Shown one piece after another: positions 39,402-64,000 of a stretch of 64,000 nt of DNA (positions are counted from its first letter, which is position 1; each line of letters opens with the position of its first letter). Origin of the DNA: Macrostomum lignano (lineage: Eukaryota); contig NIVC01001481.1 in assembly GCA_002269645.1 (NCBI GenBank), positions 217,331 through 281,330 on the forward strand, given 5' to 3'. The notes under the pieces are model-generated. The model saw nothing but the letters and a program-made list of their open reading frames with translations, searched no databases and had not been told where the DNA came from. The position numbers and the translations under genes were made by a program.

Positions 39402-40964
39402 TCACGGCTCAACAGCTTTGGCTTTGGCCGGTTTAACATCAAAATCGACGCCTTTCGGTCCGAACTTGTCCCAGAACTCGCGCAGCATCCGTTTCATAGC
39501 GTAGGCGTCCTCGCCGTCGGCGTAATATTTCGGCTCGGTTTCGCTAATACGAAAGCCGAGCGTCTTTTTGTACAGCTGCAACGCTGCCCGATTGCTGACG
39601 CGGACGTGCAGCGACACGTAGCGAGCGTGGAAGCTCTCCACCATGGCGCGAGAGGCCTGAAGTGATTGGGTGTCGCATTGCGTTTGACTAGCTTTGACTC
39701 GTTATTATAATTGGTTGATCGAGGTCACAGCAATGGAAATTTCTCTGTTTGTCAAGTGACAAGTTACAAAGGGGAATTACACATCTGGTGAAGGTCGAAA
39801 TTGGAATTCCCCAGTTGGTCAAGGTTACTGCCATGGAAATTACCCAGTTAGTCAAGGTCGAAATGTGAATTCCCCATTTGATCAAGGTCGAAAAGGGAAT
39901 TAACTATTTGATCAAGGTTGAAATGAGAATTCCCTATTTGATCAAGGTCGAAATGGGAATTCCCTATTTGATCAAGGTCGAAATGGGAATTCCCGATTTG
40001 ATCAAAGTCGAAAAGGGAATTAACTATTTGATCAAGGTTGAAATGAGAATTCCCTATTTAATCAAGGTCGAAATGGGAATTCCCGATTTGATCAAGGTCG
40101 AAATGGGAATTCCCGATTTGATCAAAGTCGAAAAGGGAATTAACTATTTGATCAAGGTCGAAATGAGAATTCCCTATTTGATCAAGGTCGAAATGGGAAT
40201 TCCTGATTTGATCAAAGTCGAAAAGGGAATTCCCGATTTGATCAAAGTCGAAAAGGGAATTAACTATTTGATCAAGGTCGAAATGAGAATTCCCGATTTG
40301 ATCAAAGTCGAAAAGGGAATTAACTATTTGATCAAGGTCGAAATGAGAATTCCCCTTTTGGTCAAGGTCGAAAGTGAAATTCCCCATTTGATCAAGGTTG
40401 AAATGAGGATTCCTAAGCTGGTTGGTCAAGGTCGAAATTGGAATTCCCCAGTTAGTCAAGGTCGAAACGGGAATTCTCCAGTTAGTCAAGGTCGAAATGG
40501 GAATATTCACCAATCGGTCAAGGTCACTGCCGTGAAATACCTCAGTTGGTCAAAAGGGATTCCACTATTGGTCAAGGTCCAAATTGGCATTTATTTCCTG
40601 ATTTTTAGAACATTTCAGTGAGAATTTTCCTGACAGTTATGGACCATCTGTTCAACCTATACTAGTCATCATCAGTCCTACAGACCTGATCCATGAGCTT
40701 CTGCGCAATGCCTAATCGGCGATAATTTCGCTTGACAGCCAGCGAGGTGATGTGACCGTGTGGCTGGTCCTCGGGGTCCTCCTCCATCTTTGCCAACACG
40801 TAGCCAACAATTTCGCCATCAAGATTCTCAGCTACGAATGATAACTGAGGCCAAGAGAGGCCGTGGTACAGATAATATTTCATCTGGTAGTTTTCTGGCA
40901 AGCACTGCAGGTTGCAGTCCTGCATGTTCATCAGGTCAGCGGGCGTGGCATTTCGAATATTCAT
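39402..40964 (-). CDS. NAA10: N-alpha-acetyltransferase 10 (NatA catalytic subunit, ARD1); exons 40964-40686, 39656-39402; 177 aa
   Basis: MNIRNA...[50 protein letters not shown]|[16 protein letters not shown] and [16 protein letters not shown] are all present. The junction is phase 0 GT-AG. Confidence 0.97.
39780..40590. repeat. 30-bp minisatellite, NAA10 intron
   Basis: Unit GATCAAGGTCGAAATGGGAATTCCCTATTT. Units degenerate toward both ends. Confidence 0.95.
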
Positions 40965-41404
40965 TTTGCATGCAAGGTGTAGATAAAAATATGGATATTG
41001 ATAGATTTTCTATGCATTTTGGTACCCGTGCATTTCAGTACCCCAGTTTTTTATGCCAAAAAATTAATAAAAATAATCCTATAACAAATATAATAAATAA
41101 TTTACAAAATATTAATGTTTCTAATAAAAGTTGTATCTATTTTGTTAAGCTGGCATGTTTTTTTTATTTAGAAAAATCCAATCCAATTAGGTTGCACCTA
41201 ATTGCATGGCATGCTGCATTTGCTGTATCCTATATATACAAATACAAGGCTGCACCTAGAAAGTGTGCTATGAAGATTTAGTTAAGTAGAGATAAAATCT
41301 ATCAATGATATTGTATATAGTTTTGATTGAAACTATTGAACTAGTCTATTTTAGTATTGATTTCTTGAATCACACAATCTTATATAAATTGAAACCATAC
41401 ATGC

Positions 41405-47630: not shown

Positions 47631-48184
47631 GTGTTGAATACTAAGTCTTTGGACTAAATAGCTATATGCAGCCTTAAGATATACCATGCAATAGTTGCAG
47701 CTAAGCTATTGGGTGTATGTTAATTATTTAAATTTGGATAGCTGTGATCACTTATTATGAATTTTTTTTAGCTACTTAAACATGCTAGCACATTAACTAA
47801 TTTTCGAATTGCAATGGACTGCCATTTAAAAATGCATAATTTTTCAACACTTTAATGTTATTATTTTTAAAATAGTTTTTCAAGGCCTAATGAAAATGCT
47901 ATTGGAACCCTAAATCCTATCAAAATCTCTACCATTATCTTAAAGATCTATGTAATTGCTTGCCAATTCAATCTTACATTACAAAAATAATTATGCATAC
48001 ATCTATCTATTGTTTAGGACATATTTACATAATTATATATACTAGTACATTTATTGTAATAGGGCTTTATACAAATTTATTAAGTGCCTTTGATTCATTT
48101 ATTCTTTTTGTTTAAATTTAGCTATTTTTCCTGTCTGTTAGTAATTTCAATTTGAACTTTTTATGACTCAGAAGTCTACAAAAT

Positions 48185-50962
48185 ATGAACAGCCAATCAA
48201 CTGCAGTTCAAGAGCTGCCTATTGTTCAGGCCAAAAGCGATGACCTCAAAGCCCAATTGAAGGCACAGTATGAAAAGGTAAAGCAACTGAATTCTAGTGC
48301 TTTGGTCAAAGGTGACACCTGGGCTGTGGTGTCAGCGCGTTGGGTGAAGCTGTGGAAAGAATATGTTGGTGCTGAAGCTTTCTATGCAAACAAGCTGGGC
48401 GATGAAAACTATCACCCTGGACCAATTGACAACTCTGACCTCATTGAACCCGATGGGAAATTAAAGGAGGGTCGGCTGGCCGAGATCGACTACTTTTTCA
48501 TGCACAAAGAAGCGTGGGATCTGCTGGCCGAGTACTACAAGACCAAGCAGTCAGAACCAATCTTTCGCAAAGTAATTGAGAAAGGAAAATTCACGCGAAC
48601 CGTAGAAGTCGAGGTCTACCTGTTGGACATGAAGCTGGCAGAGCTGGCCAACCCCGACAAGGTCATCAGCCATCGGTTCTCACGCGCCTCTTTGTTCTCT
48701 GAAGTCGAATCCACCATGAGGTCGCTGTTCAAAGTGCCCGACGATCGAGAGACGCGACTGTGGGTGTCGCTTAGCGGGACGCACTATGAGTTACTTACTG
48801 ACAAAGATCAGGCTCTGGAGAACCAGGTGTACAATAATCAGTACCTGGTGCTAGAGGTGAAGGGTACCGACGATAAGTGGCCACGCGGAGACGCACCGGG
48901 AAGCTTTACCATATCTCAAAACAGCAGCTACCTGCAGGGCACCGGTGGTCGGTTCAGCGCAGCCTCCTTTGCCACTGCCGGCTCTGGCAGTCAGGCGTCC
49001 GGCAGCGGCAGCAGCCAGCTGGAGCAACGCCGCAGCGCGACGCCCGGATTGTGCGGTCTGTCCAACCTGGGCAACACGTGCTTTATGAACTCGGCTCTGC
49101 AGGCTCTGAGCAATGTTCAAATGCTCACTGAGTACTTTCTGTCTGAAAAGTGGAGGGAGGAACTGAATCCGGACAATCCCCTTGGCATGCACGGTGAAAT
49201 CGCCAGGCGGTACGGAGAGCTGATCCGGGATATGTGGTCTGGTAAGAATTGGCACATCTCGCCACGTAGTTTCAAGTATGCTGTAGGGCAATTTGCTCCG
49301 CAGTTCTCCGGCTTCCAGCAGCAGGATGGCCAGGAGCTCATGGCGTTTCTTCTCGACGGCCTGCACGAGGACTTGAACCGCATCAAGAAGAAGCCCTACG
49401 TTGAATTAAAAGATGCTGACGGCCGTAGCGACCACGTGGTGGCGAAAGAGGCCTGGAACGACTACAAGTTGCGCAACGATTCCATTATCGTTGATCTGTT
49501 TCACGGTCAGCTAAAGTCCACGCTTATCTGTCCTGATTGCCGCAAGGTGAGCGTCACCTTTGATCCATTTTGCTACCTAAGCCTGCCGGTACCCAAGGAA
49601 CGCAATCGACTATTGGCATTCTTCTTTGTTAGCAAGGATCCAACTAAGCCACCATTGAAGTGCAAAGTGCAGGTTCCCATTGAGGGCCAGATTACCGATC
49701 TGTGCAAGGCCATTGGCCAGCAGTTCAAGGTGAAGCCTGACCACCTGCTTGTTGCCGACGTTTACAACAATAAATTTCACAAGGTGTACGCTTCGGACGA
49801 TTCCTACACCAGCATATCAAACGAGCGCGATTACATCTACGTGTACGAGCTGGACGCACCTGCCAATAGCACCAAACACGCCGTAGTGAAGGTTTACTTC
49901 GTCACCACGGCCAAGTATTCGCACGCATTCGGCCTGCCAATTGTGTTCTCCGTGCCGCTGACTGACATCACTTACGCTAACCTGTTTCAAACGGTTACAG
50001 AGAGGTCTTGTAGAATGCTGACGCTTAATTCGCCGGATCCGAAGAGCGCCACCTGGTGGAAGGACCATTCGTCAACTAAAGACGACGAGGGCATCTGCGA
50101 CAGCGGCGAAGATGATGAAGCATCTCCGCAGAGCCCGCCGCCATTGTTTGTTCTTCGCCGATCGAACGCCAACCTGACAACTGAAAACGACCTGCTTGAA
50201 GCCAATTCCAGTGAAGCAGAACCGCTGTCGGTCTCCTCCGACCTCTACTTAATGGCTCGCTTTCATCCAAAGGCAAAGTTCTACTTTTGCAACGAGCAGA
50301 ACGCTGTTCACTTTGAACGTCACTCGTCCGCTAGTATGATAATGCAGAAGCGGACGCACCATCTGGAGGACTGTCTGAAGCTATTCACCGAAGAGGAAAG
50401 GCTGGGCAAGAAGGACGCCTGGTATTGTCCGAAGTGCAAAGATTTCAAATGCGCCTCAAAGAAATTCGACCTGTGGTGCATGCCCAAGGTGCTAGTAATC
50501 CATCTAAAGCGATTCCATTACGATCGTTACTATCGCAACAAGATTGACGATCTAATTGAATTTCCAACTCGCGGCTTGGACATGACCAACTGGCTGCTGA
50601 ATCCGGAGGTGCAGGACTGCGCCACGTACGATCTGGTGTCGGTAGCCAATCACTATGGCTGCCTTGGGGGCGGCCACTACACGGCCTACGGTATGAATTA
50701 TCGCACTGGCAAGTGGCACTACTTTGACGACAGCAGCGTCAGGGAGAGCAGCGAGTCCGAAGCGGTCACGAAAGCCGCTTACGTGCTGATTTATGTCCGA
50801 CGCGATCTCATGCCGCGGCTTGGCGATTCGTCGGCCTCCGTTGATGGCGTCGCTGCCGATGCAGCTTCGCCAGGTGGCGCCGATCGAATCGACTCGGACG
50901 ACGATGATATCACCGACAAGAAGGACGGCGGCAGCCAGCCGGAGCCAATGGAAGTCAATTGA
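48185..50962 (+). CDS. USP15: Ubiquitin carboxyl-terminal hydrolase, USP4/11/15 subfamily (DUSP-UBL-split catalytic domain), single coding exon, 925 aa
   Basis: DUSP motif PGPIDNSDL, Cys box GLSNLGNTCFMNSALQAL, QQDGQE, CPDC/CPKC zinc ribbon, His box HYGCLGGGHYTAY and WHYFDDSSV are present. A pyrimidine-rich ...actcag acceptor lies 13 nt upstream of the ATG. Assignment among USP4/11/15 is not resolved. Confidence 0.93.
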   Translation: MNSQSTAVQELPIVQAKSDDLKAQLKAQYEKVKQLNSSALVKGDTWAVVSARWVKLWKEYVGAEAFYANKLGDENYHPGPIDNSDLIEPDGKLKEGRLAEIDYFFMHKEAWDLLAEYYKTKQSEPIFRKVIEKGKFTRTVEVEVYLLDMKLAELANPDKVISHRFSRASLFSEVESTMRSLFKVPDDRETRLWVSLSGTHYELLTDKDQALENQVYNNQYLVLEVKGTDDKWPRGDAPGSFTISQNSSYLQGTGGRFSAASFATAGSGSQASGSGSSQLEQRRSATPGLCGLSNLGNTCFMNSALQALSNVQMLTEYFLSEKWREELNPDNPLGMHGEIARRYGELIRDMWSGKNWHISPRSFKYAVGQFAPQFSGFQQQDGQELMAFLLDGLHEDLNRIKKKPYVELKDADGRSDHVVAKEAWNDYKLRNDSIIVDLFHGQLKSTLICPDCRKVSVTFDPFCYLSLPVPKERNRLLAFFFVSKDPTKPPLKCKVQVPIEGQITDLCKAIGQQFKVKPDHLLVADVYNNKFHKVYASDDSYTSISNERDYIYVYELDAPANSTKHAVVKVYFVTTAKYSHAFGLPIVFSVPLTDITYANLFQTVTERSCRMLTLNSPDPKSATWWKDHSSTKDDEGICDSGEDDEASPQSPPPLFVLRRSNANLTTENDLLEANSSEAEPLSVSSDLYLMARFHPKAKFYFCNEQNAVHFERHSSASMIMQKRTHHLEDCLKLFTEEERLGKKDAWYCPKCKDFKCASKKFDLWCMPKVLVIHLKRFHYDRYYRNKIDDLIEFPTRGLDMTNWLLNPEVQDCATYDLVSVANHYGCLGGGHYTAYGMNYRTGKWHYFDDSSVRESSESEAVTKAAYVLIYVRRDLMPRLGDSSASVDGVAADAASPGGADRIDSDDDDITDKKDGGSQPEPMEVN

Positions 50963-51083
50963 TTGACTATTAGACTGTCGCTATGTGCTTTTTTAATTTA
51001 AACACTGAAAGAGAAGTTACAAGGATGATTTAATTGACTCGAAACATTTGTTTGAAATTATTTATCGTAATATGAAAGAATAG

Positions 51084-51430
51084 AATGGATTGCTAATCTA
51101 GCTAGTTCATTGATAAAAGCATGTAATGGATTGCTAATCTAGCTAGTTCATTGATGAAAGCATGTAATGGATTGCTAATCTAGCTAGTTCATTGATGAAA
51201 GCATGTAATGGATTGCTAATCTAGCTAGTTCATTGATGAAAGTATGGAATGGACTGCTAATCTAGCTAGTTCATTGATGAAAGCATGGAATGGATTGCTA
51301 ATCTAGCTAGTTCATTGATGAAAGTATGGAATGGATTGCTAATCTAGCTAGTTCATTGATGAAAGTATGGAATGGATTGCTAATCTAGCTAGTTCATTGA
51401 TGAAAGTATGTAATGGATTGCTAATCTAGC
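51084..51430. repeat. 41-bp tandem repeat (8 full units plus a partial) just 3' of the USP gene
   Basis: Unit AATGGATTGCTAATCTAGCTAGTTCATTGATGAAAGCATGT. Confidence 0.95.
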
Positions 51431-52771: not shown

Positions 52772-54275
52772 TATAATTTATTGGCTCATCACCATTTATT
52801 TTTTACTTTTCTTCTGGGTTTCTTTGAATGATAGAATTCTAAAAAACGAAATTTTTGGGTTTATTTTATTTCATATTTATTCAGGATCTTTTTGAAATTC
52901 GACCCCTATCAAGTTTCGTAGTTTCTTTGCCTTTTGTTTCTTCATGTTCTAAGACCGAAAAAATAAACCAACAGGCTAATAACCCATATGTACGGTTTGT
53001 TATCAATTGTTATTAACGTAGTTAAGACCGTCTTTCCTTTTAAATTGAAAATTTCCGTTGAAGCGTAAAATATATTCGTCTTTGTCGCTTTAAATTTGTC
53101 TCATTTCCGTTTATTTTCTCTGCTTAGATAGAAACAGTACCCTTAAAAAATCAATTGTACATTGACTGGCTGTTATACGTACAACACTGCCCGTACGCAG
53201 CCTAGCCAACCCACGGCGCCCGCCACCCCAATCTCTACCCCATGTTGTACATTCGCCCAGCTGAATGAGCCCGCAACCCCTTCTTACCGCGGCTTCACCG
53301 CCCACGTGAATGTACATATGCGATAAAAGCTCTTATCTTTACAACGCCTCAGGCTCACACTTGGGCTAGGTCTCCTAACCAAATAAGGCAATGGTAAGGA
53401 GTTATTAAAAACATTATAAACAAATGGCACTAAAGCTCACATTACTACTAATAGGTCCACGGGTCAAAGATTGTCAAATCAATGTGCAGTTTGTTCAAAC
53501 CCGTGTTAAAATTTATTCAAGCAATCTTTGGCTCGCGGAGCTACTAGCAGTAATGTGAACGGGTCTTTAAGTGAAGCTGTATTGTTGATTTTATCCAAAC
53601 TGCAACTTTCACATTGGTCCATGGACCAAATTAATCCACCGTACTCTGGGCCATATTCTGGGGTATGTTGTTCGTAGAAAAATAAGATTTTCTTCTTTTC
53701 AATTCACTAGGATGCCCAATTGCCGAATCTATTTTCAGTTTGTCTTTTTTTAAAGTCTTGTTGATATACATAAAAATTGATTTCTTAACAATAAACCAAC
53801 TGGTCATTGCTTTTTGTGTGTCATAACTTTCTCTGTTAAAATTTGTTTTCTAAGATTAGGAAGCTATATATTAGGAAGTTCAGGTATATAGTTTAATCTG
53901 GGCTCAAAATCTTGCTACCAAATTCCATAGCAAACTGATCAAGTTGGGAATTTCTCACTTCTCATTTCTCGCATTGTTTGAAAAACTATCAAAGCGATTG
54001 CTTTTATTAATTTTCGATGATAGGTTGTTCAAATGAAAAAAAAGGACATTATTTAATTATTTTATTGCTTCAACTCAACATACGCACATAAATTAATTGC
54101 CCTTGCCACGTAGCGTTAGCAGCACATTAGAAATTGTGACTATGAATCAAGATTTTCTTTCACTTCTTTTTGTTCGATAAAGACGTAAATTCTGTCTGCA
54201 AATAATGCATGACATAAACTGTTTGAGCGCACTGTGACATGCACAGCAATCCTTGAATTATTAAATCCGTGAGTT

Positions 54276-55803
54276 ATGGAACTGCAAGTCATATTGAAAG
54301 CGCAGTACAAAAATGTAAAGCAGCTGAATTCTATTGCATTGGAAAAGGGCGACATCTGGTCCGTAGTGTCAGCGCGTTGGGTGAAGCGGTGGAAACAATA
54401 CGTTGGTGCTGAAGCTGATTGTGCTAACAAGCTGGGCGATGAAAACTATCACCCTGGACCGATTGACAACTCTGACCTCATTGACTCTGATGGGAAATTA
54501 AAAGAGGGCCGATTAGCTGCTGAAATCGACTACTTTTTCATGCACTTGGAGGCCTGGGAGTTGTTAGCCGAGTACTATTGTACCAAACAGCCAATGCCAA
54601 TCTTTCGCAAAGTAATCGAGAAAGGAAGATTCACGCGCACCTTGGAAGTCGAGGTCTACCTGTTTGACATGAAGCTGGCAGAGCTGGCCAACCCCGACAA
54701 GGTCATCAGCCATCGGTTCTCACGCGCCTCCCTGTTCTCTGAAGTCGAATCCACCATGAGGTCGCTGTTCAAAGTGCCCGACGATCGAGAGACGCGACTG
54801 TGGGTGTCGCTTAGCGGCAGGCACTATGAGTTACTTACTGACAAAGATCAGGCTCTGGAGAACCAGGTGTACAATAATCAGTACCTGGTGCTAGAGGTGA
54901 AGAGTTCTAACGGTCAGTGGCAGTGCCAAAGTGAGTCGAAAGTTTTTCTGTCACCATTTTTGACCAGTTTAAAATATAGCTCGTATATTTTAAAACATTC
55001 CAGACTTAATCTCCGAAAAAATAAGTAGCCGATCAACTGCAGTTCATGAGCTGCCTATTGTTCAGGCCAAAAGCGACGAACTCAAAGCCCAATTGAAGGC
55101 GCAGTATGAAAAGGTGAAGCAACTGAATTCTAGTGCTTTGGTCAAAGGTGACACCTGGGCTGTGGTGTCAGCGCGTTGGGTGAAGCTGTGGAAAGAATAT
55201 GTTGGTGCTGAAGCTTTCTATGCAAACAAGCTGGGCGATGAGAACTATCACCCTGGACCAATTGACAACTCTGACCTCATTGACCCCGATGGGAAATTAA
55301 AGGAGGGTCGGTTGGCCGAGATCGACTACTTTTTTATGCACAAAGAAGCGTGGGATCTGCTGGCCGGGTACTACAAGACCAAGCAGTCAGAACCAATCTT
55401 TCGCAAAGTAATTGTGAAAGGAAAATTCACACGAACCGTAGAAGTCGAGGTCTACCTGTTGGACATGAAGCTGGCAGAGCTGGCCAACCCCGACAAGGTC
55501 ATCAGCCATCGGTTCTCACGCGTCTCCCTGTTCTCTGAAGTCGAATCCACCATGAGGTCGCTGTTCAAAGTGCCCGATGATCGAGAGACGCGACTGTGGG
55601 TGTCGCTTAGCGGCACGCACTATGAGTTACTTACTGACAAAGATCAGGCTCTGGAGAACCAGGTGTACAATAATCAGTACCTGGTGCTAGAGGTGAAGGG
55701 TACCGACGATAAGTGGCCACGCGGAGACGCACCGGGAAGCTTTACCATATCTCAAAACAGCAACTCAGCTCAGTCTACCCGGTCAGCGCAGCCTAACTTG
55801 TGA
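54276..55803 (+). CDS. Predicted non-catalytic (DUSP-UBL)x2 protein derived from the USP4/15 N-terminus; exons 54276-54930 and 55004-55803; 484 aa
   Basis: Copy A (diverged) ends at a consensus donor CCAAA|GTGAGT (phase 1). The 73-nt intron ends TTCCAG|AC. The spliced frame runs stop-free into copy B (about 98% identical to 48192-48927) and ends at TGA 55801-55803. No Cys box is present. Expression is unverified. Confidence 0.6.
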
Positions 55804-56189
55804 CCAAGCACCCACAATCGTAAACCGAGATACGAGTAGATTTTGTTAAAGTAGCTGATATTTTTTCAAATTACTTTTGATAGTCACTTAAATATATTTG
55901 GTATCTTCAACCCAATGAAGATTTTTATCGCTCGAATATTTGCTTTAAATTGCTTTTGTATTATTGTGTGTCCTAGAATGTTGGATAGAATTGCATGTTA
56001 CTACTAACTTAAGTAACTAAGTATCAATCCTGATAACATATAACAAATCATATTGCAGCGTGCAGAATCACTGTTGTCTTCATTAAAGAATGATTAGAAA
56101 AGGCATCGGATCAACAAGCTTCTGATTGGCTACAATTGAAATAAAGTAACCACAGCCAGCGCAAGCCAGCTACAGGCTCCGCTGCAGAA

Positions 56190-57869
56190 ATGGGCCCGTT
56201 CCCCTTTCGCCTGGTGCCTATGCTGGACGAGCAGCACGACATTCTAGTGCTGACTGGCCTGATTGGCCTGGTAGTGGTGCTGCTGGCCTACTATGCCTAC
56301 AAGCGGCTTTACTGGTCCAGATCCATCCCCATACCTATCGATCTGCCCAAGCTGCCCAGGGTGCCATTGTTAAACGATACTCGGCCGCATTTTCGTAAAC
56401 GCGATCGAATTCGTTATTGGGTTCGACGGATGATGCGTCAGGCTCCGCTGCCCAATGTACTGTTGGAGGCCAGGCGGCAGAAACCTGCAGCGGCTGTGTC
56501 TAATATACTCAAATACCTGAGACAGGTGTGCTGTGGGAGCGCACTGCTGGATTCTGTGTTTAGTAATGTGGAGCTGAATGGGATTCTGCATGATTTGATG
56601 AAGGACGCTGAATGGGATTCTTCATGATTTGATGATGCAGGAAGCTGAATGGGATTCTGCATGATTTGATGCAGGAAGCTGAATGGGATTCTGCATGATT
56701 TGATGCAGAAAGCTGAATGGGATTCTGCATGATTTGATGCAGAAAGCTGAATGGGATTCTGCATGATTTGATGCAGAAAGCTGAATGGGATTCTGCATGA
56801 TTTGATGCAGAAAGCTGAATGGGATTCTGCATGATTTGATGCAGAAAGCTGAATGGGATTCTGCATGATTTGATGCAGAAAGCTGAATAGGATTCTGCAT
56901 GATTTGATGCAGAAAGCTGAATGGGATTCTGCATGATTTGATGCAGGAAGCTGAATGGGATTCTGCATGATTTGATGCAGCAGAAAGCTGAATGGGATTG
57001 TTCATGATTTGATGCAGGAAGCTGAATGGGACTCTTCATGATTTGATGCAGCAGAAAGCTGAATGGGATTGTTCATGATTTGATGATGCAGGAAGCTGAA
57101 TGGGATTCTGCATGACTACGGTATATCGGAATAAGTAGATTGGGATTCTAATACGATTCCACCTTCCTAATTAAAGGTCGGGCCCCGTGGTAGCGTTGGT
57201 CGCGTGCCGCTGGCCCGCGCTCGCATCTCGGCCATCCCGGACTACTTCCTGGAGCCCGAGGATCGCGACGCGGACGAGCCGACCATGCTAAATGAATTTT
57301 ATCTGGCAATTAAATCCGTGCGAATATTCGGCAGTCTGGAGCGCTCCTTCATCATGGAGCTGTGCAAGTGCCTGGAGATCATGGAGCTTCGTGCCGGCGA
57401 TGCCCTGTTTAAGATTGGCGACATCGATGGCGACATGTTCATTGTGCAGTCCGGCCGCGTGCAGCTCTACATGACTGAGGACGGTGAGGCCCGCTTGTAG
57501 TGTGTTTCATGCCCGTGTGCTTTTTGGCAGCTTGCGGCTGATCCTGGGAATTCATGGAAGCTCAGCCACTTTCATCCTGTCTGTCTCTTTCTTTCTCTCC
57601 TCTCCCCTCTACGACTCATTCGAGATGTACATAGCGCCTGCGTACGTTTTTAATCCACATTTGCGAGCTCCTCACTCACATCGAGCTATCGCATTTATAT
57701 CGGAGACCATCTCGCTTAAAAATATTTGCGTTCATAATAGCCCTGGGGAAGAATATCGGCACTTTGCTTGAATTGTCTGTCTATCTGTCTGTCTGTCTGT
57801 CTATCTGTCTGTCTGTCTGTCTCTGTGTCTGTCTGTCTGTCTGTGTGTCTGTCTGTCTGTCTGTCTGTC

Positions 57870-57934
<65 letters not shown>

Positions 57935-57935
57935 G

Positions 57936-57966
<31 letters not shown>

Positions 57967-57967
57967 G

Positions 57968-57998
<31 letters not shown>

Positions 57999-58027
57999 GT
58001 GTCTGTCTGTCTGTCTGTCTGTCTGTG

Positions 58028-58078
<51 letters not shown>

Positions 58079-58099
58079 GTGTCTGTCTGTCTGTCTGTG

Positions 58100-58142
<43 letters not shown>

Positions 58143-58151
58143 GTCTGTCTA

Positions 58152-58196
<45 letters not shown>

Positions 58197-60395
58197 GTCT
58201 GTCTATCTGTCTGTCTATCTGTCTGTCTGTCTGTCTCTGTGTCTGTCTGTCTGTCTGTGTGTCTGTCTGTCTGTCTGTCTGTCTCTGTCTGTCTGTCTGT
58301 CTGTCTATCTGTCTGTCTGCTATCTGTCTGCCTGTCTGTCCGTCTGTCTGTGTGTCTGTCTGTCTATGTCTGTCTCTGTCTGTCTGTCTATCTGTCTGCC
58401 TGTCTGTCTGTCTGTCTGTCTGACTGACTCTCTGTCTGTCTGTCTGTTGCCAACCCCGCCCGCCCCCCTCAATCCGCAGGTGTGCAGCACCGATTCCACG
58501 AGTTTGGGCCCAACCAGCCGGTGTACTCGCTGCTAAGCTTCCTAGACGTGCTGACGGGCCACCCGCGGCCCTATCGAACCCTGTCAGCAGAGGCGGTCAC
58601 CGACGCCAAGGTGCTGCGCATTCCTTCCCGCCGTCTAGTTGGCCTGTTCGCCCAGCAGCAGTTCCAGCAGACCATGGTGCGCATAGTCCAGGTGATCACC
58701 ATCCGACTGCAGCGGGTCACCTTTCAAGCCTTGAATAACTATTTGAGCCTGAGCACGGAATTGTTTAGCGCCGATAGGCAGTCGCTGCCGGACTGCGAGG
58801 TGCTCAAACTGCAGGGACGAATTGCTGAGCTGTCTGGCGTTCCCCTTCTGGTGTCGAGTAAAACAGCAGCTTCTGCCGCGGCTGCGTCTTCGTCTGGCGG
58901 AGCTGCTGAAGCTGCGGCTGCTGCTGCATCGGCCAGTCTGGGGGACAGCGGCAGTAGCGGTGAGTGCAGACTGGTTGTCTAGCCTGGTGGGCTGCTCTAT
59001 AGATGTTGATCTAGGCTGCTCTAGAGATACATAGGCTGTTCTATAGATGTTGATCTAGGCTGCTCTATAGATGTTGATCTAGGCTGTTCTATAGATACTG
59101 ATAGGCTGCTCTATAGATGTTGATCTAGGCTGCTCTATAGATACTGATAGGCTGCTCTATAGATACTGATAGGCTGCTCTATAGATGTTGATCTAGGCTG
59201 CTCTATAGATACTGATAGGCTGCTCTATAGATACTGATAGGCTGCTCTATAGATACTGATAGGCTGCTCTATAGATACTGATAGGCTGCTCTATAGATAC
59301 TGATAGGCTGCTCTATAGATACTGATAGGCTGCTCTATAGATGTTGATCTAGGCTGCTCTATAGATACTGATAGGCTGCTCTATAGATACTGATAGGCTG
59401 CTCTATAGATGTTGATCTAGGCTGCTCTATAGATGTTGATCTAGGCTGCTCTATAGATACTGATAGGTAGGCTGCTCTATAGATTTTGATCTAGGCTGTT
59501 CTATAGATACTGATAGGTAGGCTGCTCTATAGATTTTGATCTAGGCTGTTCTATAGATACTGATAGGCTGCTCTAGCTATAGATGTTGATCTAGGCTGTT
59601 CTATAGATACTGATAGGCTGCTCTATAGCTATTGATCTAGGCTGCTCTATAGCTATTGATCTAGGCTGCTCTATAGATATTGATCTAGGCTGCTCTATAG
59701 ATATTGGTAGACTACTATATATAAATTGATAGACTACTCTATAGAGATTGATAGGCTACTCTAGAGAGATGTATATAAATTACCGGAAGAGGTAGGTTGA
59801 CCACCCAGGAAATTGAAAGACTAACTTGGGAAATTGAGGGCATTCATTGAAGAAAATTTGAAAGGTCATCAAGATCCGAAGACAGTCTTGAACTCAATAG
59901 TAGCTTAGCTCGCCGGTGACACCGCATCCCGCTCATCTTGTTTATTGTTTTCCAGCCGCCGGTGGTCAGTCTCTTATTGAACAGGCGCAGCAGCAGCAGC
60001 AGCGGCATTATCACCAAGACCAGACACCGCCAGTCCGCGTGTACACCCGCTCCCGGTCTCGGTCTCCGTCGGCGGCGGAATCTTCCACCGCAGCGTCCGA
60101 CGCTCAGACAGTTGCCGCCGCTGTCGCCGCCTCGCCCGACGCACCTTCCGTTTCAGCTTCGAACGACGCCGATACGGACTTCGACGCCGCGGTTGAGAAG
60201 GCGTTGGGCAATCGGCGTACTAAGAAAGGCAGTCTGGAAGGCTTGGAGATGGGCGAACTACCAAGGCGTCACATGTCGCTAAGTTTGCACTCAGGTGGAG
60301 GCGGTGGTGGCAGCGGCAGACGGCGGACATCGCGGGTGCCAGCAAACGAGCAGAGCGACGCGTTTCTGAGCACTTTGATGGCGGCGGCTAAGAAG
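56190..60395 (+). CDS. PNPLA6: Neuropathy target esterase / swiss cheese (PNPLA6/7-like), 5' part; exons 56190-56525, 57177-57483, 58480-58959, 59956-60395; continues beyond the window
   Basis: N-terminal TM helix, [16 protein letters not shown], cNMP-binding domain ([21 protein letters not shown]; [18 protein letters not shown]) and [23 protein letters not shown] are present. Junctions are phase-consistent GT-AG. The patatin domain is not in the window, and the exon 4 donor (AAG|GTAAAA) is less certain. Confidence 0.88.
56570..57115. repeat. 34-bp minisatellite, NTE intron 1
   Basis: Unit GATTTGATGCAGAAAGCTGAATGGGATTCTGCAT. Confidence 0.95.
57772..58448. repeat. (TCTG)n microsatellite, NTE intron 2
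   Basis: About 670 bp of TCTG repeats with variants. Confidence 0.97.
58990..59770. repeat. 22-24-bp minisatellite, NTE intron 3
   Basis: Unit ATAGGCTGCTCTATAGATACTG, with an alternative unit ending GATGTTGATCT. Confidence 0.95.
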
Positions 60396-60444: not shown

Positions 60445-63400
60445 CTCTTGACTTACTTGACTTAGCTGCAGGGCTGTCCCGGAGGGAACACAGCGGGAAG
60501 GTGCGAGCGCCCATTCCGCTAGTCCCTGAACGGCCGACGCGTCGCTATGGACGGAGGGTTGGCGCCGCCCAGGGAGGTCCCCCAGTGTCGCCAGCAGCTA
60601 TAGTGCTCTCTGGAAAGGAGAGTTCAGCCCTGCGGGTGGCCCGAAGGTAGCGCATGAGCTGATTAAAGTTTTCGGGTTTGCACGCTTCAGTAATAGATGT
60701 GTGTGGCCCGAGGTAAGTGAGTCTGGCCCGCGTGAAGGCGGGACAGATGCTGACGAAATGCTCAGCGGTTTCGTCACTGAGTTGCAGAAACTGCAGGTGG
60801 CGCTGGTGGGGTTGCCCTGCAGGTACTGGTGCCTGGAGAAGCAGCCGTGACCAGAGAGGGTCATGGTGGCAGCCCGGATGTCTCTGCGCGAGAGGCGCAA
60901 GAGGAGCTTCCGGAGCTGGTGAGAGGGCTGAGGGACAGCGCCTCTGGATTGCCTGCAGTTCGTGCGGTTCGCCCAAGTCGAGCGGTGCTGAGTCCTGATC
61001 CACGCTTTGATGCGCGAGTCGATGACACAGCCAGGAATCGGGACAAGAGGTTCGGGGCCGAGAGAGGAGCCGGAGGCACCAACTTTTGCAAGGGTGTCAG
61101 CCAGCTCATTTCCTCGGATCCCCACATGCCCCGGAACCCACTTAAGGGTAATTTTGTTGGCGGAACCCAACACGTTGAGAAGTTTGATACAGTCGAGGAC
61201 TGTAGCAGAGTTGGTGCTGCAGCCACTGATGGCGTGCAAGGCAGCTTGGCTGTCCGAATGGAAAATGATGTTCTTACCAGTAACGCCAGTGGCGAGAAGC
61301 TCTGCAGTGCAGGAGCTGATGGCCAGAACTTCATTTTGGAAAACACTGGAGTTGACCCCAGTGTATTGAGCGTGGGTAGCGATGACCCTCCCGTTCAGAA
61401 AGATTCCAACACCAAAGCCGGTGTTGGCTGACTGCTTAGAACCGTCGGTGTAGCAATGAAGCTCACCAGGGTTCCATTGGTCATTGATGTTATCGCGCGA
61501 GTCGATAGCTACGGAGTAGCGCTGTCTCAGGTTGAGCGTTGAGGCAATGCCATCGGTGAAGACGCGATTGGCCTGACACTCGTTGAGAAAGTTGAGGCAC
61601 AGATCGCTATGCGGGACAAGGTTCCGCTTAGCAGGTGCTCTCATGTAAATGAATTTGACGCCGGCATCAATTAGACGCCGCGTCGTTCTAGCCGCCTCAC
61701 CCCTGATGAAGAGGTCAAGAGGCGGAAGATTAAGGAAGGCCCCCATGCCAGCAAAGGGCGTGGACCTGGTGGCGTTGCAGATGAGCCTACACGCTCTGCC
61801 TTGGATCGTGTTGAGCAGGTCTGCATGGCTTTTGACCTGGGTAGCGCTAACCCAGGCAACAGAGGCGTACGTAATGGCAGGTCTAACTACGGAAGTATAG
61901 ATCCACCAAAGCCGCTTTGGGGATAGACCCCAAGAAGTGCCAAGTGCTCGTCGGAGCTGGGCCAGGATGGCTGAGGCACGCTTGGCTTTTGCTTTCACGT
62001 GGAGGACCAGTTGAGCCGGTGGTCAAGTATGACCCCGAGACATCTGGTCTGGTGCGCGAAGGCAATATCTCTGCCGTAGAGCTGCAGAGGACGTATGTTC
62101 CAGCGTAGTCTGCTGGTAAACATAATGGCAACGGTTTTGGGCTCAGAGAGTTCCAGACCATTGTCATTGGCCCAGGATTCTGCTTTGCGGATAAAGCTCT
62201 GCATCAGATCCCTGAGCGTGCTGGGAGACGGTCCTGCCACAATGACCGTGACGTCATCAGCATACCCGACTTTGAAGACGGGGTCGGGTCGGGAGTCACT
62301 CAAAAGAGCGTCCATGACCAGGTTCCAGAGCGTCGGGTGAGGACTCCGCCTTGGGGTCCACCCTTACAGACTCTGGTGGAGGCAGTTTGCCAAGAAGTTG
62401 GGCAGTGACCGTACGGTTGGAGATCATGTACATGATCCACCGTATGAGGGTAGCATGAGCTTTGCGATTTTGAAGGGCCCTCTGAAACGCTTCAAAGATA
62501 ACGTTGTCGAAGGCGCCAACAATGTCAAGAAAGAGAGCCAGAGCGTAACCGTCACCCAGTACCGCCCTTTCAATCTTCTCGACAATCGCATGCAGGGCGC
62601 TGTCAGTCGACCTCCCGGTACGGAAGGCGTGCTGATTATTGCTGAGGGGCATCGCTGTCAGCTCGCAGGACAGCAGCCGCCAGAGAATAAGCCTCTCAGT
62701 GAGCTTAAGCATCGCTGACGTTAAGCTAATAGGCCGGAAGGCCTTGACGCTTTGGTAGTCACCCTTCCCAGGTTTGGGAATAAAGACTACCCGAGCTTCA
62801 GTCCAGCATTTGGGAACGTATCCCAGCTGGATAGAGGCCGCATAAGATTGCGGGTGAGTCTCAGGAACGAGGGTATCTTGGCTGCTTCACGAAGGAGAAC
62901 AGGGTAGATACCATCAGGTCCAGGAGATTTGAAGGGTTTGAAGGTTCTGACCGCACGAGCGATTAGGTCTTCAGTGACAATGCCCGCCGCTAGGGTGGCT
63001 CCATCCATCGAATGGTTGGGCTCGCGGTCTAGCAGTAGGTACCCTCGGAAGAATGTGCTAAGCATATGCTGAAGCACTTCTTCAGGGTCTTTAGTAAGAG
63101 AGCCATCATCTTTTTTGATCATGGCTAATTTGGACATTTTGTCCATTGTAAGGGCCTTGACAAGCCTGGAAGTAGGTCTGTCTTGATCCAATTCATTGCA
63201 GAATTGGCGCCACTTACATTCCTTGGCCTTGCGCACTTCAGATTTTAAATTGCGGGAGGCTTGCCGGAAAAGCTCCATGTCCTCCGGGTTTCCGGTCTTC
63301 ATGGCACGGCGACGAAGGCTTTTGGCCTTCCGCCTGAGTTTCCCCAGCTCCGGGTTCCACCACGGCGCCGAGGTCTTGCCTTTGTAGGCGCGAGCAGGAC

Positions 63401-64000
63401 AAGCCGCTACGTAGGCTGCAATAATGCAACCTGTCAGCGTCTCAGCCATATGATCCACATCCTCGCAGGTCTCAATCGGACGTAAGTCCGTGAGTTCCTG
63501 CAGGTGCAGATCAAGGGCAGCCTTGTAGGCCGCAATCAGTGTTGCGGATATTTCGCCTCCAAGTGATCGGAGACTGGGTTTTAGTGTCCGCGATGTTAAA
63601 GACGATAAAGCAGTGGTCAGACAGGGATGGCTCCTCAGACCAGACTCTCCACTCCTCAACTCTGTCAAAGAGTCTTGGGGTAACGAGTGTGGCGTCGAGG
63701 ACCTCGGTCCAGTCTGCCATTATTAAAGGTAGGAGTGCTGCCGCGGTTGCAGAGCATGAGGTTTGTGTTAGAGATAAGGGCCAGAAGCTCCTCTCCTCTA
63801 GTGTTGGTATCTTTGCTGCCCCAGTGCTTGTGGTGCACGTTGAGGTCGCCCCCTAAGCACAAGCTCAGCGTTCTGGACTCGCAGTACTGCGCAAGGCGCA
63901 GTAAACTCTCGGGACAGGGTCTCTGTCGCCTGGGATATAAACCGAGGCAACAAGACACGTACCGCGGAGAGAAATGATTAGATTGGATGACGCAAAGGTC
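60445..64000 (-). mobile_element. Non-LTR retrotransposon (APE endonuclease-RT-RNase H-CCHC), I-group, LOA/Tad1-like; frameshifted; extends past the window end
   Basis: APE motifs (GGDLNVHHKHWGS, TPTFNNG, SDH) lie at 63.5-64.0 kb. RT motifs (KSPGPDGI, QHAFRTGRST, FLDIVGAFDNV, GYADDV) lie at 62.0-62.95 kb. RNase H motifs (YTDGSK, FQNEVLAI, SDSQAAL, WVPGH, GNELAD) lie at 61.1-61.46 kb. The C-terminal region has LSRRDIR...LSGHG and C-x2-C...EHFVSIC. The protein is spread over about 7 ORF pieces. Confidence 0.93.

What the first reader, a model, noticed from the sequence alone, without database searches (positions are those of the whole stretch)
54276..55803. New gene candidate: catalytically empty tandem (DUSP-UBL)x2 'decoy' of the neighbouring deubiquitinase
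Two partial duplicates of the USP N-terminus lie 3.3 kb downstream of the parent. Read separately they look like fragments. However, copy A ends at a perfect donor (CAA A|GTGAGT, 54930) and a 73-nt intron ends at TTCCAG (55003). The spliced frame (...QWQCQ-N-LISEKISSRSTAVHELP...) runs without a stop through copy B to its own stop, giving 484 aa. Copy A keeps an open frame despite many substitutions and a one-codon insertion (GRLAAEIDY), which suggests selection. In USP4/15 the DUSP-UBL module binds partners such as SART3 and, in USP4, promotes ubiquitin release (established). A bivalent module without a catalytic domain could be a competitive inhibitor, adaptor or trans-regulator of its parent (inference).
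Basis: partly seen in the sequence, partly recalled or inferred. Interest (0 to 1): 0.8.

Follow-up and report, generated by a model that had tools for sequence, protein, structure and literature searches.

The report
Partial duplicates of a flatworm deubiquitinase
Two real, enzyme-less copies of the front end of a deubiquitinase gene sit just downstream of it in the flatworm Macrostomum lignano; they belong to a small, still-rearranging gene family already annotated elsewhere in the genome, and nothing yet shows that they are spliced into one two-module protein.

Summary
Copy A (54276-54930) and copy B (55016-55803) are partial DUSP-UBL duplicates of the intronless USP4/15-type gene at 48185-50962. 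Joining 54930 to 55004 gives a stop-free 484-aa frame.

The window is Macrostomum lignano, the last 64 kb of contig NIVC01001481.1 (assembly Mlig_3_7). Two further duplicated loci carry the same family. L004 has A+B, and there B keeps its ATG. L003 has a single A/B hybrid, already annotated from RNA-seq as a 250-aa protein (PAA83135.1, Mlig013358g2). So the copies are not an assembly artefact, and the gene kind is not new.

Copies A, B and the parent exchange sequence by gene conversion and unequal crossover, so open frames alone prove little. Only A's old 5' half (dS about 0.67 from the parent) shows past purifying selection (omega about 0.3). Changes since the three loci split fit weak or no constraint (window copies 9 nonsynonymous : 4 synonymous). 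The window's B has lost its start codon (ATG to ATA).

The A-B splice is plausible but untested. The donor fits the species motif, yet any in-frame GT..AG pair arises by chance, and neither A+B locus has an annotated CDS. I put about 0.25 on a fused two-module protein. The "decoy" function is conjecture.

The parts
48185..50962 (+). Parent gene. An intronless USP4/15-type deubiquitinase of 925 aa (DUSP 43-131, UBL 150-234, UCH 290-870). It belongs to the M. lignano Mlig004366 gene family. The database model P0157 starts at 48167.
   Evidence: ORF. Pfam hits. 100% match to P0157 on NIVC01001481.1. Between loci dS is 0.039 and omega is 0.07.
54276..54930 (+). Copy A. A DUSP-UBL-only ORF with its own ATG, corresponding to parent codons 19-235. 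There is an in-frame TGA two codons upstream of the ATG. It carries one extra Ala codon (54516-54518).
   Evidence: It is 98.2% identical to copy A of L004. Its start (MELQVILKAQYKNVKQLN) is shared with the annotated protein PAA83135.1.
54276..54640 (+). Old, unconverted 5' half of A (the DUSP domain and linker). This is the only tract that is informative about selection.
   Evidence: dS 0.67 and dN 0.12 against the parent. Branch estimates are dN_A 0.099 and dN_P 0.022. 15 amino-acid changes are derived in A against 3 in the parent. Codons 19 to about 90 of this A-type tract are shared by all three loci; the rest, to about codon 140, is shared by A of the window and of L004.
54641..54902 (+). 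Gene-conversion tract in A (the UBL domain), nearly identical to B and the parent.
   Evidence: A vs B: 2 synonymous and 4 nonsynonymous differences. A vs parent: dS 0.068.
54931..55003 (+). Candidate 73-nt cis intron (GTGAGT...TTCCAG). If it is not removed, A's ORF runs on to the stop at 55026-55028, giving 250 aa.
   Evidence: The donor fits the M. lignano motif GT[G/A]AG and the acceptor fits [T/C]TNCAG (PMC8629364). The tract is only 76.7% identical to L004 and differs by a 7-nt indel, but GTGAGT and YAG are kept.
55004..55042 (+). Linker that would be translated only in the 73-nt-intron model. An alternative acceptor, CTGCAG|TT at 55042|55043, gives a 112-nt intron and a 471-aa product.
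   Evidence: The junction QWQCQ|IHELPIV in A0A1I8I947 corresponds to this second acceptor. The linker is 68.8% identical to L004.
55016..55803 (+). Copy B. It corresponds to parent position -5 through codon 248-253, followed by a short unrelated tail (NSNSAQSTRSAQPNL) and a stop. The parent's ATG is ATA here (55021-55023). The first in-frame ATG lies about codon 107, inside the DUSP domain.
   Evidence: Private changes are 7 nonsynonymous: 3 synonymous. The tail results from a 132-nt deletion relative to L004, which fused B to the remnant of a third partial copy.
56082..56146 (+). Possible polyadenylation signals (ATTAAA near 56082, AATAAA near 56140) downstream of B. They lie just before the NTE-like gene, whose ATG is at 56190.
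   Evidence: Read directly from the sequence; not tested. NTE exons were placed with tblastn.

Best explanation
The region holds two genuine DNA-level partial duplicates of the neighbouring USP4/15-type deubiquitinase of Macrostomum lignano. They are members of a small DUSP-UBL-only gene family that sits between the USP gene and the NTE-like gene in all three duplicated loci of this hidden-polyploid genome.

**History (shown).** The family evolves in concert. The founding copy A arose long before the loci multiplied. B and a third remnant came later. Gene conversion and unequal crossover among A, B and the parent have produced A+B tandems (the window and L004) and one A/B hybrid (L003).

**Product (inferred).** In the window, the unit most likely to make protein is A. 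It has its own ATG, an intact DUSP-UBL fold and a history of purifying selection. It would be translated from a transcript that also carries B. B has lost its start codon, so it can be translated only if the GTGAGT donor after A's codon 218 is cis-spliced to an acceptor just upstream of B. That is possible but unproven.

**Mechanism (inferred).** The product would be a non-catalytic DUSP-UBL protein that occupies partners of the parent's N-terminal module. The most plausible partner is a SART3-type protein that binds the DUSP-UBL beta-hairpin. That interaction is sub-micromolar in human USP4 and USP15, and the critical Phe is kept in all copies. Activating or inhibiting the parent's catalytic domain in trans is less likely, because that contact is about 100 uM in USP4. 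A's extra Ala lies in the loop needed for that activation.

**Sub-probabilities.**
- A-only protein: about 0.35.
- A-B fusion: about 0.25.
- No functional product from this locus: about 0.35.
For: - **Real duplicates, not an artefact.** The same arrangement lies on three separate contigs, each with its own divergence.
- **Organism and assembly.**, with PMC5730564.
- **Domains.**. **Match to solved structures.**
- **Concerted evolution.** A's UBL half is converted. Codons 96-124 of B in L004 are A-type, and B's 5' end there equals the L004 parent. The L003 copy switches from A-type to B-type between codons 89 and 94.
- **Past selection on A.** Omega is about 0.3 against 0.07 for the parent. Substitutions avoid conserved columns (p = 0.011), and 19 of 19 conserved columns are kept.
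- **Expression of the family.** PAA83135.1 (250 aa) comes from an RNA-seq, StringTie and TransDecoder annotation. It shares A's 5' flank and A's start codon.
- **Splice plausibility.** The signals fit the species motifs and are kept in both A+B loci. Both loci stay in frame with either acceptor.
- **Partner binding over trans-activation.** SART3 KD is 0.2-0.9 uM through the hairpin residues F127 and V128 (PMC4914101). Trans-activation KD is about 100 uM (PMC4243247).
Against: - The RNA-seq-based GenBank annotation has no CDS between the USP gene and the NTE gene, in the window or in L004.
- Changes private to one locus give omega about 0.49 for all copies (P = 0.04). For the window's two copies the count is 9:4, which cannot be told from neutrality (P = 0.31).
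- The window's B has lost its ATG, and 7 of its 10 private changes are nonsynonymous.
- Conversion from a selected parent can keep dead copies open.
- A's Ala insertion sits in a loop whose length is constant in every family member inspected. This could equally mark decay.
- The SART3 hairpin is only partly conserved, even in the parent (GKFTRT against GLFVKH).
- No transcript, junction read or peptide from this locus could be examined.
Confidence: 0.55

Rival explanations
1. A and B are exons 1 and 2 of one gene. A 73-nt intron (or the 112-nt alternative) is removed, and a 484-aa (or 471-aa) protein with two DUSP-UBL modules acts as a bivalent decoy or adaptor for the parent's partners.
For: - The frame is open across both copies.
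- The donor GTGAGT fits the species' cis motif and the acceptor TTCCAG fits its acceptor motif.
- A strict donor with an in-frame YAG arises in only 3% of spacer shuffles.
- Both signals survive 23% divergence of the intron between the window and L004, and L004 also stays in frame at 512 or 499 aa.
- An independent gene model (A0A1I8I947) uses the same donor.
- The window's B has no start codon of its own, so fusion is the only way it could be translated in full.
- By the rule cited in PMC8629364, an acceptor is trans-spliced only when no cis donor lies upstream of it; here A's donor does, so cis-splicing of any transcript that starts at A would be expected.
- A (DUSP-UBL)x2 protein with a RING domain exists in Lymnaea, CAL1543085.1.
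Against: - Neither A+B locus has an annotated spliced CDS, although TransDecoder would call a 484-aa ORF.
- The one annotated family member is a single-exon, single-module gene.
- In L004, B keeps its own ATG.
- The linker that the fusion would translate is only 68.8% conserved between loci.
- The window's B is drifting, with 7 nonsynonymous: 3 synonymous private changes.
- Any in-frame GT..AG pair is available by chance in 100% of shuffles.
- The neighbouring NTE introns are about 650-1100 nt.
- A0A1I8I947 is a run-on of four genes, so it is unreliable.
Confidence: 0.25
2. In this locus both copies are non-functional relics. A was once a working DUSP-UBL-only gene or part of one. Today A and B are kept open only by their youth and by repeated gene conversion from the selected parent. 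The family's function, if any, is carried by the L003-type hybrid.
For: - The window copies' private changes are 9 nonsynonymous: 4 synonymous, omega 0.63, not different from neutral.
- B has lost its start codon (ATG to ATA), and E116G, E132V and A168V are private to it.
- A carries an insertion in a loop of constant length.
- No CDS is annotated here.
- Conversion tracts are evident.
- A simple calculation from the branch rates allows up to about a quarter of A's history to have been neutral.
Against: - A's old tract has omega about 0.3, no stop or frameshift at dS 0.67, and substitutions that avoid conserved columns.
- A's 5' flank and CDS are 99.2% and 98.2% identical to L004 while the adjoining spacer is 76%.
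- The L003 gene uses the same 5' flank and start codon and is transcribed.
Confidence: 0.35
3. B is an independent gene. Its mRNA is SL trans-spliced at the TTCCAG acceptor 17 nt upstream of the former start codon, and it encodes its own DUSP-UBL-only protein.
For: - The acceptor fits the SL trans-splice motif [T/C]TNCAG, and 30-39% of M. lignano genes are trans-spliced (PMC8629364, PMC5730564).
- In L004, B has an intact ATG and a 288-aa ORF.
Against: - In the window the ATG is ATA, and the next in-frame ATG lies inside the DUSP domain.
- The SL's terminal ATG would read ATG ACT TAA, a stop.
- A strong cis donor lies 73 nt upstream.
Confidence: 0.04
4. Copy B, or the whole tandem, is an assembly artefact: a mis-joined haplotype or a collapsed repeat.
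For: Mlig_3_7 is a redundant assembly of a karyotypically unstable, recently duplicated genome (PMC5730564, PMC10468722). B differs from the parent by only 3.1%.
Against: - The A+B tandem recurs on an independent contig (L004) with its own substitutions, an indel and a longer B tail.
- B has sharp breakpoints and unique flanks.
- B and the parent differ at 23 sites, and the pattern is shared in part with other loci.
Confidence: 0.02

Closest known systems
PAA83135.1 / UniProt A0A267GAR1 (BOX15_Mlig013358g2, 'DUSP domain-containing protein', 250 aa), Macrostomum lignano contig NIVC01000432.1
   Same: It occupies the same position between the USP (Mlig004366) gene and the NTE gene in a duplicated locus. 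It has the same 5' flank, the same start codon and the same A-type first 70 or so codons as the window's A. It is DUSP-UBL only, with no catalytic domain.
   Different: It is a single module: an A/B hybrid with the crossover between codons 89 and 94. It lacks the Ala insertion, has no candidate intron, and ends ...FANAGYS. It is 89% identical to the window's A and 86% to B. It is annotated from transcripts; the window's copies are not.
Human USP15 short isoform Q9Y4E8-4 / N-terminal DUSP-UBL proteoform
   Same: It is a DUSP-UBL-only product of a USP4/15-type gene that exists as a protein. It is reported in its own complex (NQO2, TANGO2, AHSP) without full-length USP15 (PMC11297038).
   Different: It is made from the parent gene by alternative transcript processing or proteolysis, not from a separate duplicated gene. 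It has one module. It is about 40% identical in sequence.
Lymnaea stagnalis CAL1543085.1 (660 aa)
   Same: It carries two tandem DUSP-UBL modules in one predicted protein with no USP catalytic domain.
   Different: It has a C-terminal RING finger, so it is a putative E3 ligase and not a bare decoy. It is 36% identical, of independent origin, and only a prediction.
DUSP-UBL modules shuffled into other proteins, found in hemichordates and fish and in library proteins whose source was not looked up. Partners include TRIM-like RING/B-box (Ptychodera XP_070541952.1, Xyrauchen TRIM47-like), coiled-coil plus BTB (Saccoglossus XP_006813504.1), kinase and PARP.
   Same: They show that the DUSP-UBL module is repeatedly duplicated away from its catalytic domain and reused.
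   Different: In those proteins the module is fused to an effector domain. Here it stands alone or is doubled.
USP4/USP15 DUSP-UBL module as characterised biochemically
   Same: The fold and hallmark residues are the same. The VEVY interface motif (USP4 E134 and Y136) and the hairpin Phe (USP4 F127) are kept in the parent, A and B.
   Different: There is no catalytic domain in cis. The hairpin reads GKFTRT or GRFTRT in place of GLFVKH. The positions of USP4 M24 and F51 are Asn and Ala in all M. lignano copies. A has an extra residue in the loop that corresponds to USP4 88-92. The USP4 numbering comes from my own recollection of the sequence; it agrees with the residue identities named in the papers.

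Membership tests
USP4/11/15-type DUSP-UBL module | DUSP domain (PF06337) above Pfam's gathering score | tested here: met
   A scores 56.6 bits and B 62.7 bits; the cut-off is 29.3.
USP4/11/15-type DUSP-UBL module | Adjacent USP-type UBL domain (PF14836, Ubiquitin_3) above the gathering score | tested here: met
   A scores 62.1 bits and B 59.7 bits; the cut-off is 24.
USP4/11/15-type DUSP-UBL module | Sequence match to solved DUSP-UBL structures across both domains | tested here: met
   B residues 28-240 align with USP15 3pv1_A residues 9-225, E = 8.8e-50. USP4 5ctr_C gives E = 4e-45. A was not submitted on its own.
USP4/11/15-type DUSP-UBL module | Family-conserved core columns retained | tested here: met
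   22 columns are at least 80% conserved across the 91 other family segments in the alignment. The parent keeps 19 of them, and A and B keep the same 19.
USP4/11/15-type DUSP-UBL module | Constant length of the DUSP loop that corresponds to USP4 residues 88-92 (needed for activation in USP4) | tested here: not met
   A has one extra Ala (GRLAAEIDY). The 40 family members inspected, the parent and B do not (PMC4243247). The feature is met for B.
USP4/11/15-type DUSP-UBL module | SART3-binding beta-hairpin GLFVKH with the critical Phe-Val | tested here: inconclusive
   The hairpin length and the Phe are kept, but Val is Thr: GKFTRT in the parent and B, GRFTRT in A. Binding was not tested. No M. 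lignano SART3 was examined.
Ubiquitin-specific protease (active deubiquitinase) | UCH catalytic domain (PF00443) with Cys and His boxes | tested here: not met
   The parent has it (237 bits, residues 290-870). A and B have none. tblastn with E up to 10 finds no other fragment of the parent in the window.
Expressed protein-coding gene | Intact ORF with a start codon | tested here: met
   Met for A: ATG at 54276 with G at -3 and +4, 218 codons to the donor, 250 aa if unspliced. Not met for B alone: ATA replaces the ATG at 55021.
Expressed protein-coding gene | Purifying selection (dN/dS below 1) | tested here: inconclusive
   The old A tract gives a branch omega of about 0.3, clearly below 1. 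Changes since the loci split give 9:4 for the window copies (P = 0.31) and 21:12 for all copies (P = 0.04). Gene conversion confounds the estimate for B.
Expressed protein-coding gene | Transcript, splice-junction or peptide evidence at this locus | not testable with these tools
   No RNA-seq data were accessible. The GenBank annotation has no CDS here, but it has one at the L003 paralogue. The junction 24-mer and a conserved 36-mer are absent from the metagenome collection, which evidently does not contain this organism.
Mlig013358-type DUSP-UBL-only gene family of M. lignano | Position between the USP and NTE genes, with the A-type 5' flank, start codon and first 70 or so codons | tested here: met
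   The window's A, A of L004 and the L003 gene share the flank, the ATG and every A-type substitution in codons 19-89.
Processed pseudogene / retrocopy | 3'-complete copy with a poly(A) tract and target-site duplications | tested here: not met
   Both copies keep the 5' part and lack the 3' two-thirds of the parent. No poly(A) tract is present and the flanks are unrelated to the parent's. Absence of introns is uninformative because the parent CDS has none.

The most novel reading that the evidence does not exclude
The A-B transcript is cis-spliced into a bivalent (DUSP-UBL)x2 protein. Because SART3-type partners are dimers with one DUSP-UBL site per monomer, such a protein could out-compete the monovalent parent for its targeting factor. 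That would make it a genome-encoded, dosage-tunable antagonist of a deubiquitinase. It would have been born by partial tandem duplication and would be remodelled continuously by gene conversion in a recently polyploid flatworm.
Probability: 0.1. Interest if true: 0.6.

Novelty: new member of a known kind. Interest (0 to 1): 0.3.

Why it matters
If the family is functional, it would be a natural case of a deubiquitinase's regulatory and targeting module released as a separate protein. The only described parallel found here is a human USP15 short isoform or proteoform of unknown role. M. lignano allows RNAi and transgenesis, and A's 5' half is diverged enough to be targeted specifically.

The three loci also capture stages of one process: a tandem with a start-less B, a tandem in which B has its own start codon, and a recombinant single copy. 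That makes the region a compact example of concerted evolution after whole-genome duplication.

The case also carries a warning. An open reading frame in a duplicate that exchanges sequence with a selected parent is not evidence of selection.

As it stands this is an unannotated paralogue of an already annotated hypothetical gene, so the immediate value is modest.

Tried and rejected
- **Homology searches that failed.** The search for homologous proteins timed out three times before it worked.
- **Exact look-ups.** The parent's ATG-start ORF, A, B and the spliced 484-aa product are not in the protein collection. The spliced product could not be submitted to the look-up of encoding contigs.
- **Direct junction evidence.** The spliced-junction 24-mer and a conserved 36-mer gave no hits in metagenome contigs. 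That collection apparently lacks this organism, so the result says nothing either way.
- **Decayed flanks.** I considered that the flanks of A and B are decayed parental sequence. That would have given a neutral yardstick, and would have meant B inherited the parent's acceptor. Alignments were no better than shuffles (p = 0.12-0.95; p = 0.2-0.6). I dropped the idea.
- **Start codon from the spliced leader.** I considered that the leader's terminal ATG could start B. The frame reads ATG ACT TAA, so I rejected it.
- **Retrocopy origin.** Rejected: the copies are truncated at the 3' end and have no poly(A) tract.
- **Other features in the region.** There are no Rfam or tRNA hits on either strand. 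The minus-strand ORF at 54140-54430 has no support.
- **Literature.** Searching for Mlig013358 and Mlig004366 found nothing.
- **Outgroup.** L001 is saturated at synonymous sites (pS about 0.75), so only amino-acid and dN polarisation was possible.
- **Structure prediction.** Not run.
Full report
**1. The observation**

The parent is a single uninterrupted ORF at 48185-50962 on the + strand, 925 aa. It has a DUSP domain (residues 43-131), a USP-type UBL domain (150-234) and a complete UCH catalytic domain (290-870).

blastn of the region against the window finds two partial copies:
- Copy B, 55016-55765, matches parent 48180-48929 at 96.9% over 750 bp without gaps.
- Copy A, 54293-54921, matches parent 48256-48881 at 88.7% with one 3-nt insertion.

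Both copies pass Pfam's cut-offs for DUSP and Ubiquitin_3 and lack any catalytic domain. B matches solved USP15 and USP4 DUSP-UBL structures at E = 1e-45 to 1e-50. tblastn finds no further fragment of the parent in the window.

The exon ends CAA A at 54930. The intron GTGAGT...TTCCAG occupies 54931-55003 (73 nt). The joined CDS is 1455 nt, giving 484 aa.

B's counterpart of the parental ATG is ATA (55021). B has no other in-frame ATG before the middle of its DUSP domain.

**2. How much of that is chance**

I shuffled the 94-nt spacer that has no homology to the parent, keeping its dinucleotide content. Some in-frame, stop-free GT..AG pair appeared in all 5000 shuffles. A strict GTRAGT donor with an in-frame YAG acceptor appeared in 3%. 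The frame-restoring intron is therefore unremarkable in itself, and the strong donor is only mildly unusual. A second strict solution exists in the real sequence: the same donor with acceptor CTGCAG|TT at 55042|55043, giving a 112-nt intron and 471 aa.

**3. Where the window comes from**

The parent equals a 931-aa database model (P0157) on contig NIVC01001481.1 of assembly GCA_002269645.1. Its 90% cluster holds named Macrostomum lignano proteins.

NIVC00000000 is the Mlig_3_7 assembly. Its GenBank annotation was built from RNA-seq with StringTie and TACO, mapped trans-splice and poly(A) sites, and TransDecoder ORFs. Non-coding and repeat-overlapping transcripts were removed (PMC5730564).

The window is the last 64 kb of that contig. 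M. lignano is a hidden polyploid with a recent whole-genome duplication and a redundant assembly (PMC10468722; PMC5730564).

**4. Three loci, three arrangements**

The cluster led to two further loci in the same assembly. Each has the gene order USP, then DUSP-UBL copy or copies, then an NTE/patatin-like gene.

*L004 (NIVC01002395.1)* is colinear with the window and has both A and B.
- The GTGAGT donor is intact. The acceptor is TAG in place of CAG. The intron carries a 7-nt deletion.
- B keeps its ATG (MNSQSTAVHELP...) and runs for 288 aa.
- B's tail is longer and includes the remnant of a third partial copy.
- The window's short B tail (NSNSAQSTRSAQPNL*) results from a 132-nt deletion between two ACCATATCTCAAAACAGCA repeats.

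*L003 (NIVC01000432.1)* has a single copy.
- It has A's 5' flank, A's ATG and A-type codons up to codon 89.
- From codon 94 onward it is B/parent-type. This is what an unequal crossover between A and B would produce.
- This copy is annotated: PAA83135.1, BOX15_Mlig013358g2, 250 aa, listed in UniProt as a "DUSP domain-containing protein".

Neither the window nor L004 has any annotated CDS between the USP and NTE genes.

A UniRef model not tied to this assembly (A0A1I8I947, 1925 aa) runs USP, A, B and NTE together. It joins A to B as ...QWQCQ|IHELPIV, which is the same donor with the second acceptor.

**5. Concerted evolution**

The codon table of all eight sequences shows repeated exchange:
- A's UBL half is nearly identical to B and the parent, with dS 0.03-0.07.
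- Codons 96-124 of B in L004 are A-type.
- The first 95 or so codons of B in L004 carry the private variants of the L004 parent.
- The window's B shares variants with the parents of other loci.

An open frame in B, or in A's UBL half, is therefore not evidence of selection, because a selected parent keeps repairing them. Only the A-type tract has escaped conversion long enough to be informative. Codons 19 to about 90 are A-type in all three loci. Codons up to about 140 are A-type in A of the window and of L004.

**6. Selection**

*Old tract.* In A's first 120 codons, A against the parent gives 33 synonymous and 32 nonsynonymous differences (dS 0.67, dN 0.12, omega 0.18).

The nearest relative available is a 1019-nt genomic contig from an unidentified sequencing run (L001, 71% amino-acid identity). 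It is saturated at synonymous sites but polarises protein change.
- 15 amino-acid changes are derived in A, 3 in the parent and 7 are ambiguous.
- Three-point dN gives 0.099 on the A branch and 0.022 on the parent branch.
- If dS is split equally, omega is about 0.3 for A and about 0.07 for the parent.

A has therefore evolved about four times faster than the parent, but well below neutrality.

A's substitutions fall on variable columns of a 91-sequence family alignment (Mann-Whitney p = 0.011). All 19 highly conserved columns that the parent keeps are also kept in A and in B.

A simple mixture calculation allows up to about a quarter of A's history to have been neutral.

*Recent changes.* Counts of nucleotide changes private to one sequence, that is, changes made since the loci split:

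| Group | Nonsynonymous : synonymous | Omega | P against neutrality |
|---|---|---|---|
| Parents | 1 : 5 | 0.06 | 0.0025 |
| All five DUSP-UBL-only copies | 21 : 12 | 0.49 | 0.04 |
| L003 annotated copy | 6 : 5 | - | 0.07 |
| Window's two copies | 9 : 4 | 0.63 | 0.31 |
| Window's B alone | 7 : 3 | - | 0.38 |

The private changes in the window's B include M1I, E116G, E132V and A168V. The full-length parent between the window and L004 gives dS 0.039 and omega 0.07.

The family was constrained in the past. It is weakly constrained at best now, and the window's copies cannot be distinguished from neutral drift.

**7. The candidate intron**

Points in favour:
- M. lignano's enriched cis donor motif is GT[G/A]AG. 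Its cis acceptor motif is CAG. Its SL trans-splice acceptor motif is [T/C]TNCAG (PMC8629364). The window's GTGAGT and TTCCAG fit, and so does CTGCAG.
- That paper cites the rule that an acceptor is trans-spliced only when no donor lies upstream in cis. By that rule, a transcript that starts at A should cis-splice.
- Both signals survive in L004 although the intron is only 76.7% identical. The 5' flank is 99.2% identical and A's CDS is 98.2%. By my estimate, eight signal bases would all survive that divergence by chance about 12% of the time.
- Both loci remain in frame with either acceptor: 484 or 471 aa in the window, 512 or 499 aa in L004.

Points against:
- No spliced CDS is annotated.
- The linker that only the fusion would translate is 68.8% conserved between loci.
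- The neighbouring NTE introns are about 650-1100 nt, and the mean annotated intron in this species is about 1.1 kb.
- The only transcript-supported family member is single-exon.

The unspliced tail of A is not conserved either: the ORF is 250 aa in the window and 236 aa in L004, and the frames differ after the indel.

SL trans-splicing cannot rescue B. The leader ends in ATG, and at 55004 the reading would be ATG ACT TAA.

**8. Likely function**

All steps here are inferred.

[quoted passage not shown] F127 and V128 are critical, and SART3 is a dimer (PMC4914101). In M. lignano the hairpin has the same length and keeps the Phe, but it reads GKFTRT in the parent and B and GRFTRT in A.

DUSP-Ubl added in trans stimulates the USP4 catalytic core only at a KD of about 100 uM. 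Mutations in loop 88-92 impair that activation (PMC4243247).

A's extra Ala lies in the corresponding loop, whose length is constant in the family members inspected.

Competition for, or adaptation of, DUSP-UBL partners is therefore a more plausible mechanism than trans-regulation of the parent's catalytic domain. A may have lost the activation surface.

A human DUSP-UBL-only USP15 proteoform with its own partners is a precedent (PMC11297038).

**9. Comparison with what is known**

DUSP-UBL modules without a USP domain are common in the protein library:
- short DUSP-UBL-only models, such as Diadema XP_071492350.1 (258 aa) and Xyrauchen isoform X4 (240 aa);
- a Lymnaea (DUSP-UBL)x2-RING protein;
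- fusions to TRIM-like, BTB, kinase and PARP domains.

The window's copies are unannotated paralogues of an already annotated, uncharacterised M. lignano gene. I found no paper on the family.

**10. Verdict**

The "new gene" reading is partly right: this locus is unannotated, but the gene family is already known as a hypothetical protein.

My estimates for this locus:
- two-module spliced protein: about 0.25;
- A-only protein: about 0.35;
- no functional product: about 0.35.

The decoy mechanism is reasonable but untested. Mapping existing RNA-seq data to the three loci would settle the structural question quickly.

Noticed in passing
window 51072-51430; L004 12906-14412: A 41-nt tandem array (8.8 copies, 96% matches) lies just 3' of the USP gene. 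At the duplicated locus L004 it appears expanded to about 35 copies, judging from the blastn coordinates. This is a large copy-number difference between recently duplicated loci.
   Followed up: partly
window 48185-50962; L001 137-829: The parent CDS has no introns in any of the three M. lignano loci. The nearest relative found (Logan run SRR31628392, 71% amino-acid identity) has a GT intron right after codon 215 (ENQ|V) and an acceptor 8 nt upstream of its ATG. A and B also lack that intron. The intron was therefore lost in M. lignano's line before the duplications, or gained in the relative's.
   Followed up: partly
L003 10753-10823; L004 about 18600-18660; window 55756-55803: A remnant of a third partial copy (the UBL end, about parent codons 226-252) follows B in L003 and L004. 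The window has lost 132 nt here by recombination between two ACCATATCTCAAAACAGCA repeats. That deletion created B's unusual tail and its stop codon.
   Followed up: yes
window codon 119 of the copies (A: 54579-54581): One codon is Lys in all parents but Cys in the window's A, Gly in A of L004 and Ser in B of L004. These are three different residues within A-type tracts, at a position that is Gly in 87% of the wider family.
   Followed up: no
window 56190-60395 (+): An NTE/patatin-like (cNMP-binding) gene starts 390 nt after B's stop codon. tblastn places exons at 56190-56528, 57174-57485, 58479-58814 and 59955-60395. Intron 1 holds a 34-nt tandem array (56572-57115) and intron 2 a (TGTC)n tract (57774-58447). 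Intron 1 appears to use an AAG acceptor.
   Followed up: partly
UniRef A0A1I8I947 (P0279): A 1925-aa public model is a run-on of four units (USP + A + B + NTE). It should not be taken as one protein, but it independently picks the same donor after A.
   Followed up: yes
window 60601-64000 (-), 39405-41009 (-), 34535-34909 (-): There are reverse-transcriptase ORFs that look like a non-LTR retrotransposon at the contig end, exons of an N-acetyltransferase gene (NAA10-like by eye), and a cytochrome c1 exon. The last two are annotated at the paralogous loci.
   Followed up: no
protein library hits P0002-P0035: DUSP-UBL modules occur in many non-USP architectures, fused to TRIM, BTB, kinase, PARP or RING domains. 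This contradicts the statement in PMC11297038 that DUSP is not found outside USP architectures.
   Followed up: partly
window 48164-48184 vs L003/L004 parents: The sequence just upstream of the parent's ATG reads ACTCAG|AAGTC in the window but ACTCAAGAAAGC in L003 and L004. A putative acceptor 13 nt before the start codon is therefore not strictly conserved. The database CDS models all begin right after the upstream TGA, so they are stop-to-stop ORFs and do not mark mapped 5' ends.
   Followed up: partly
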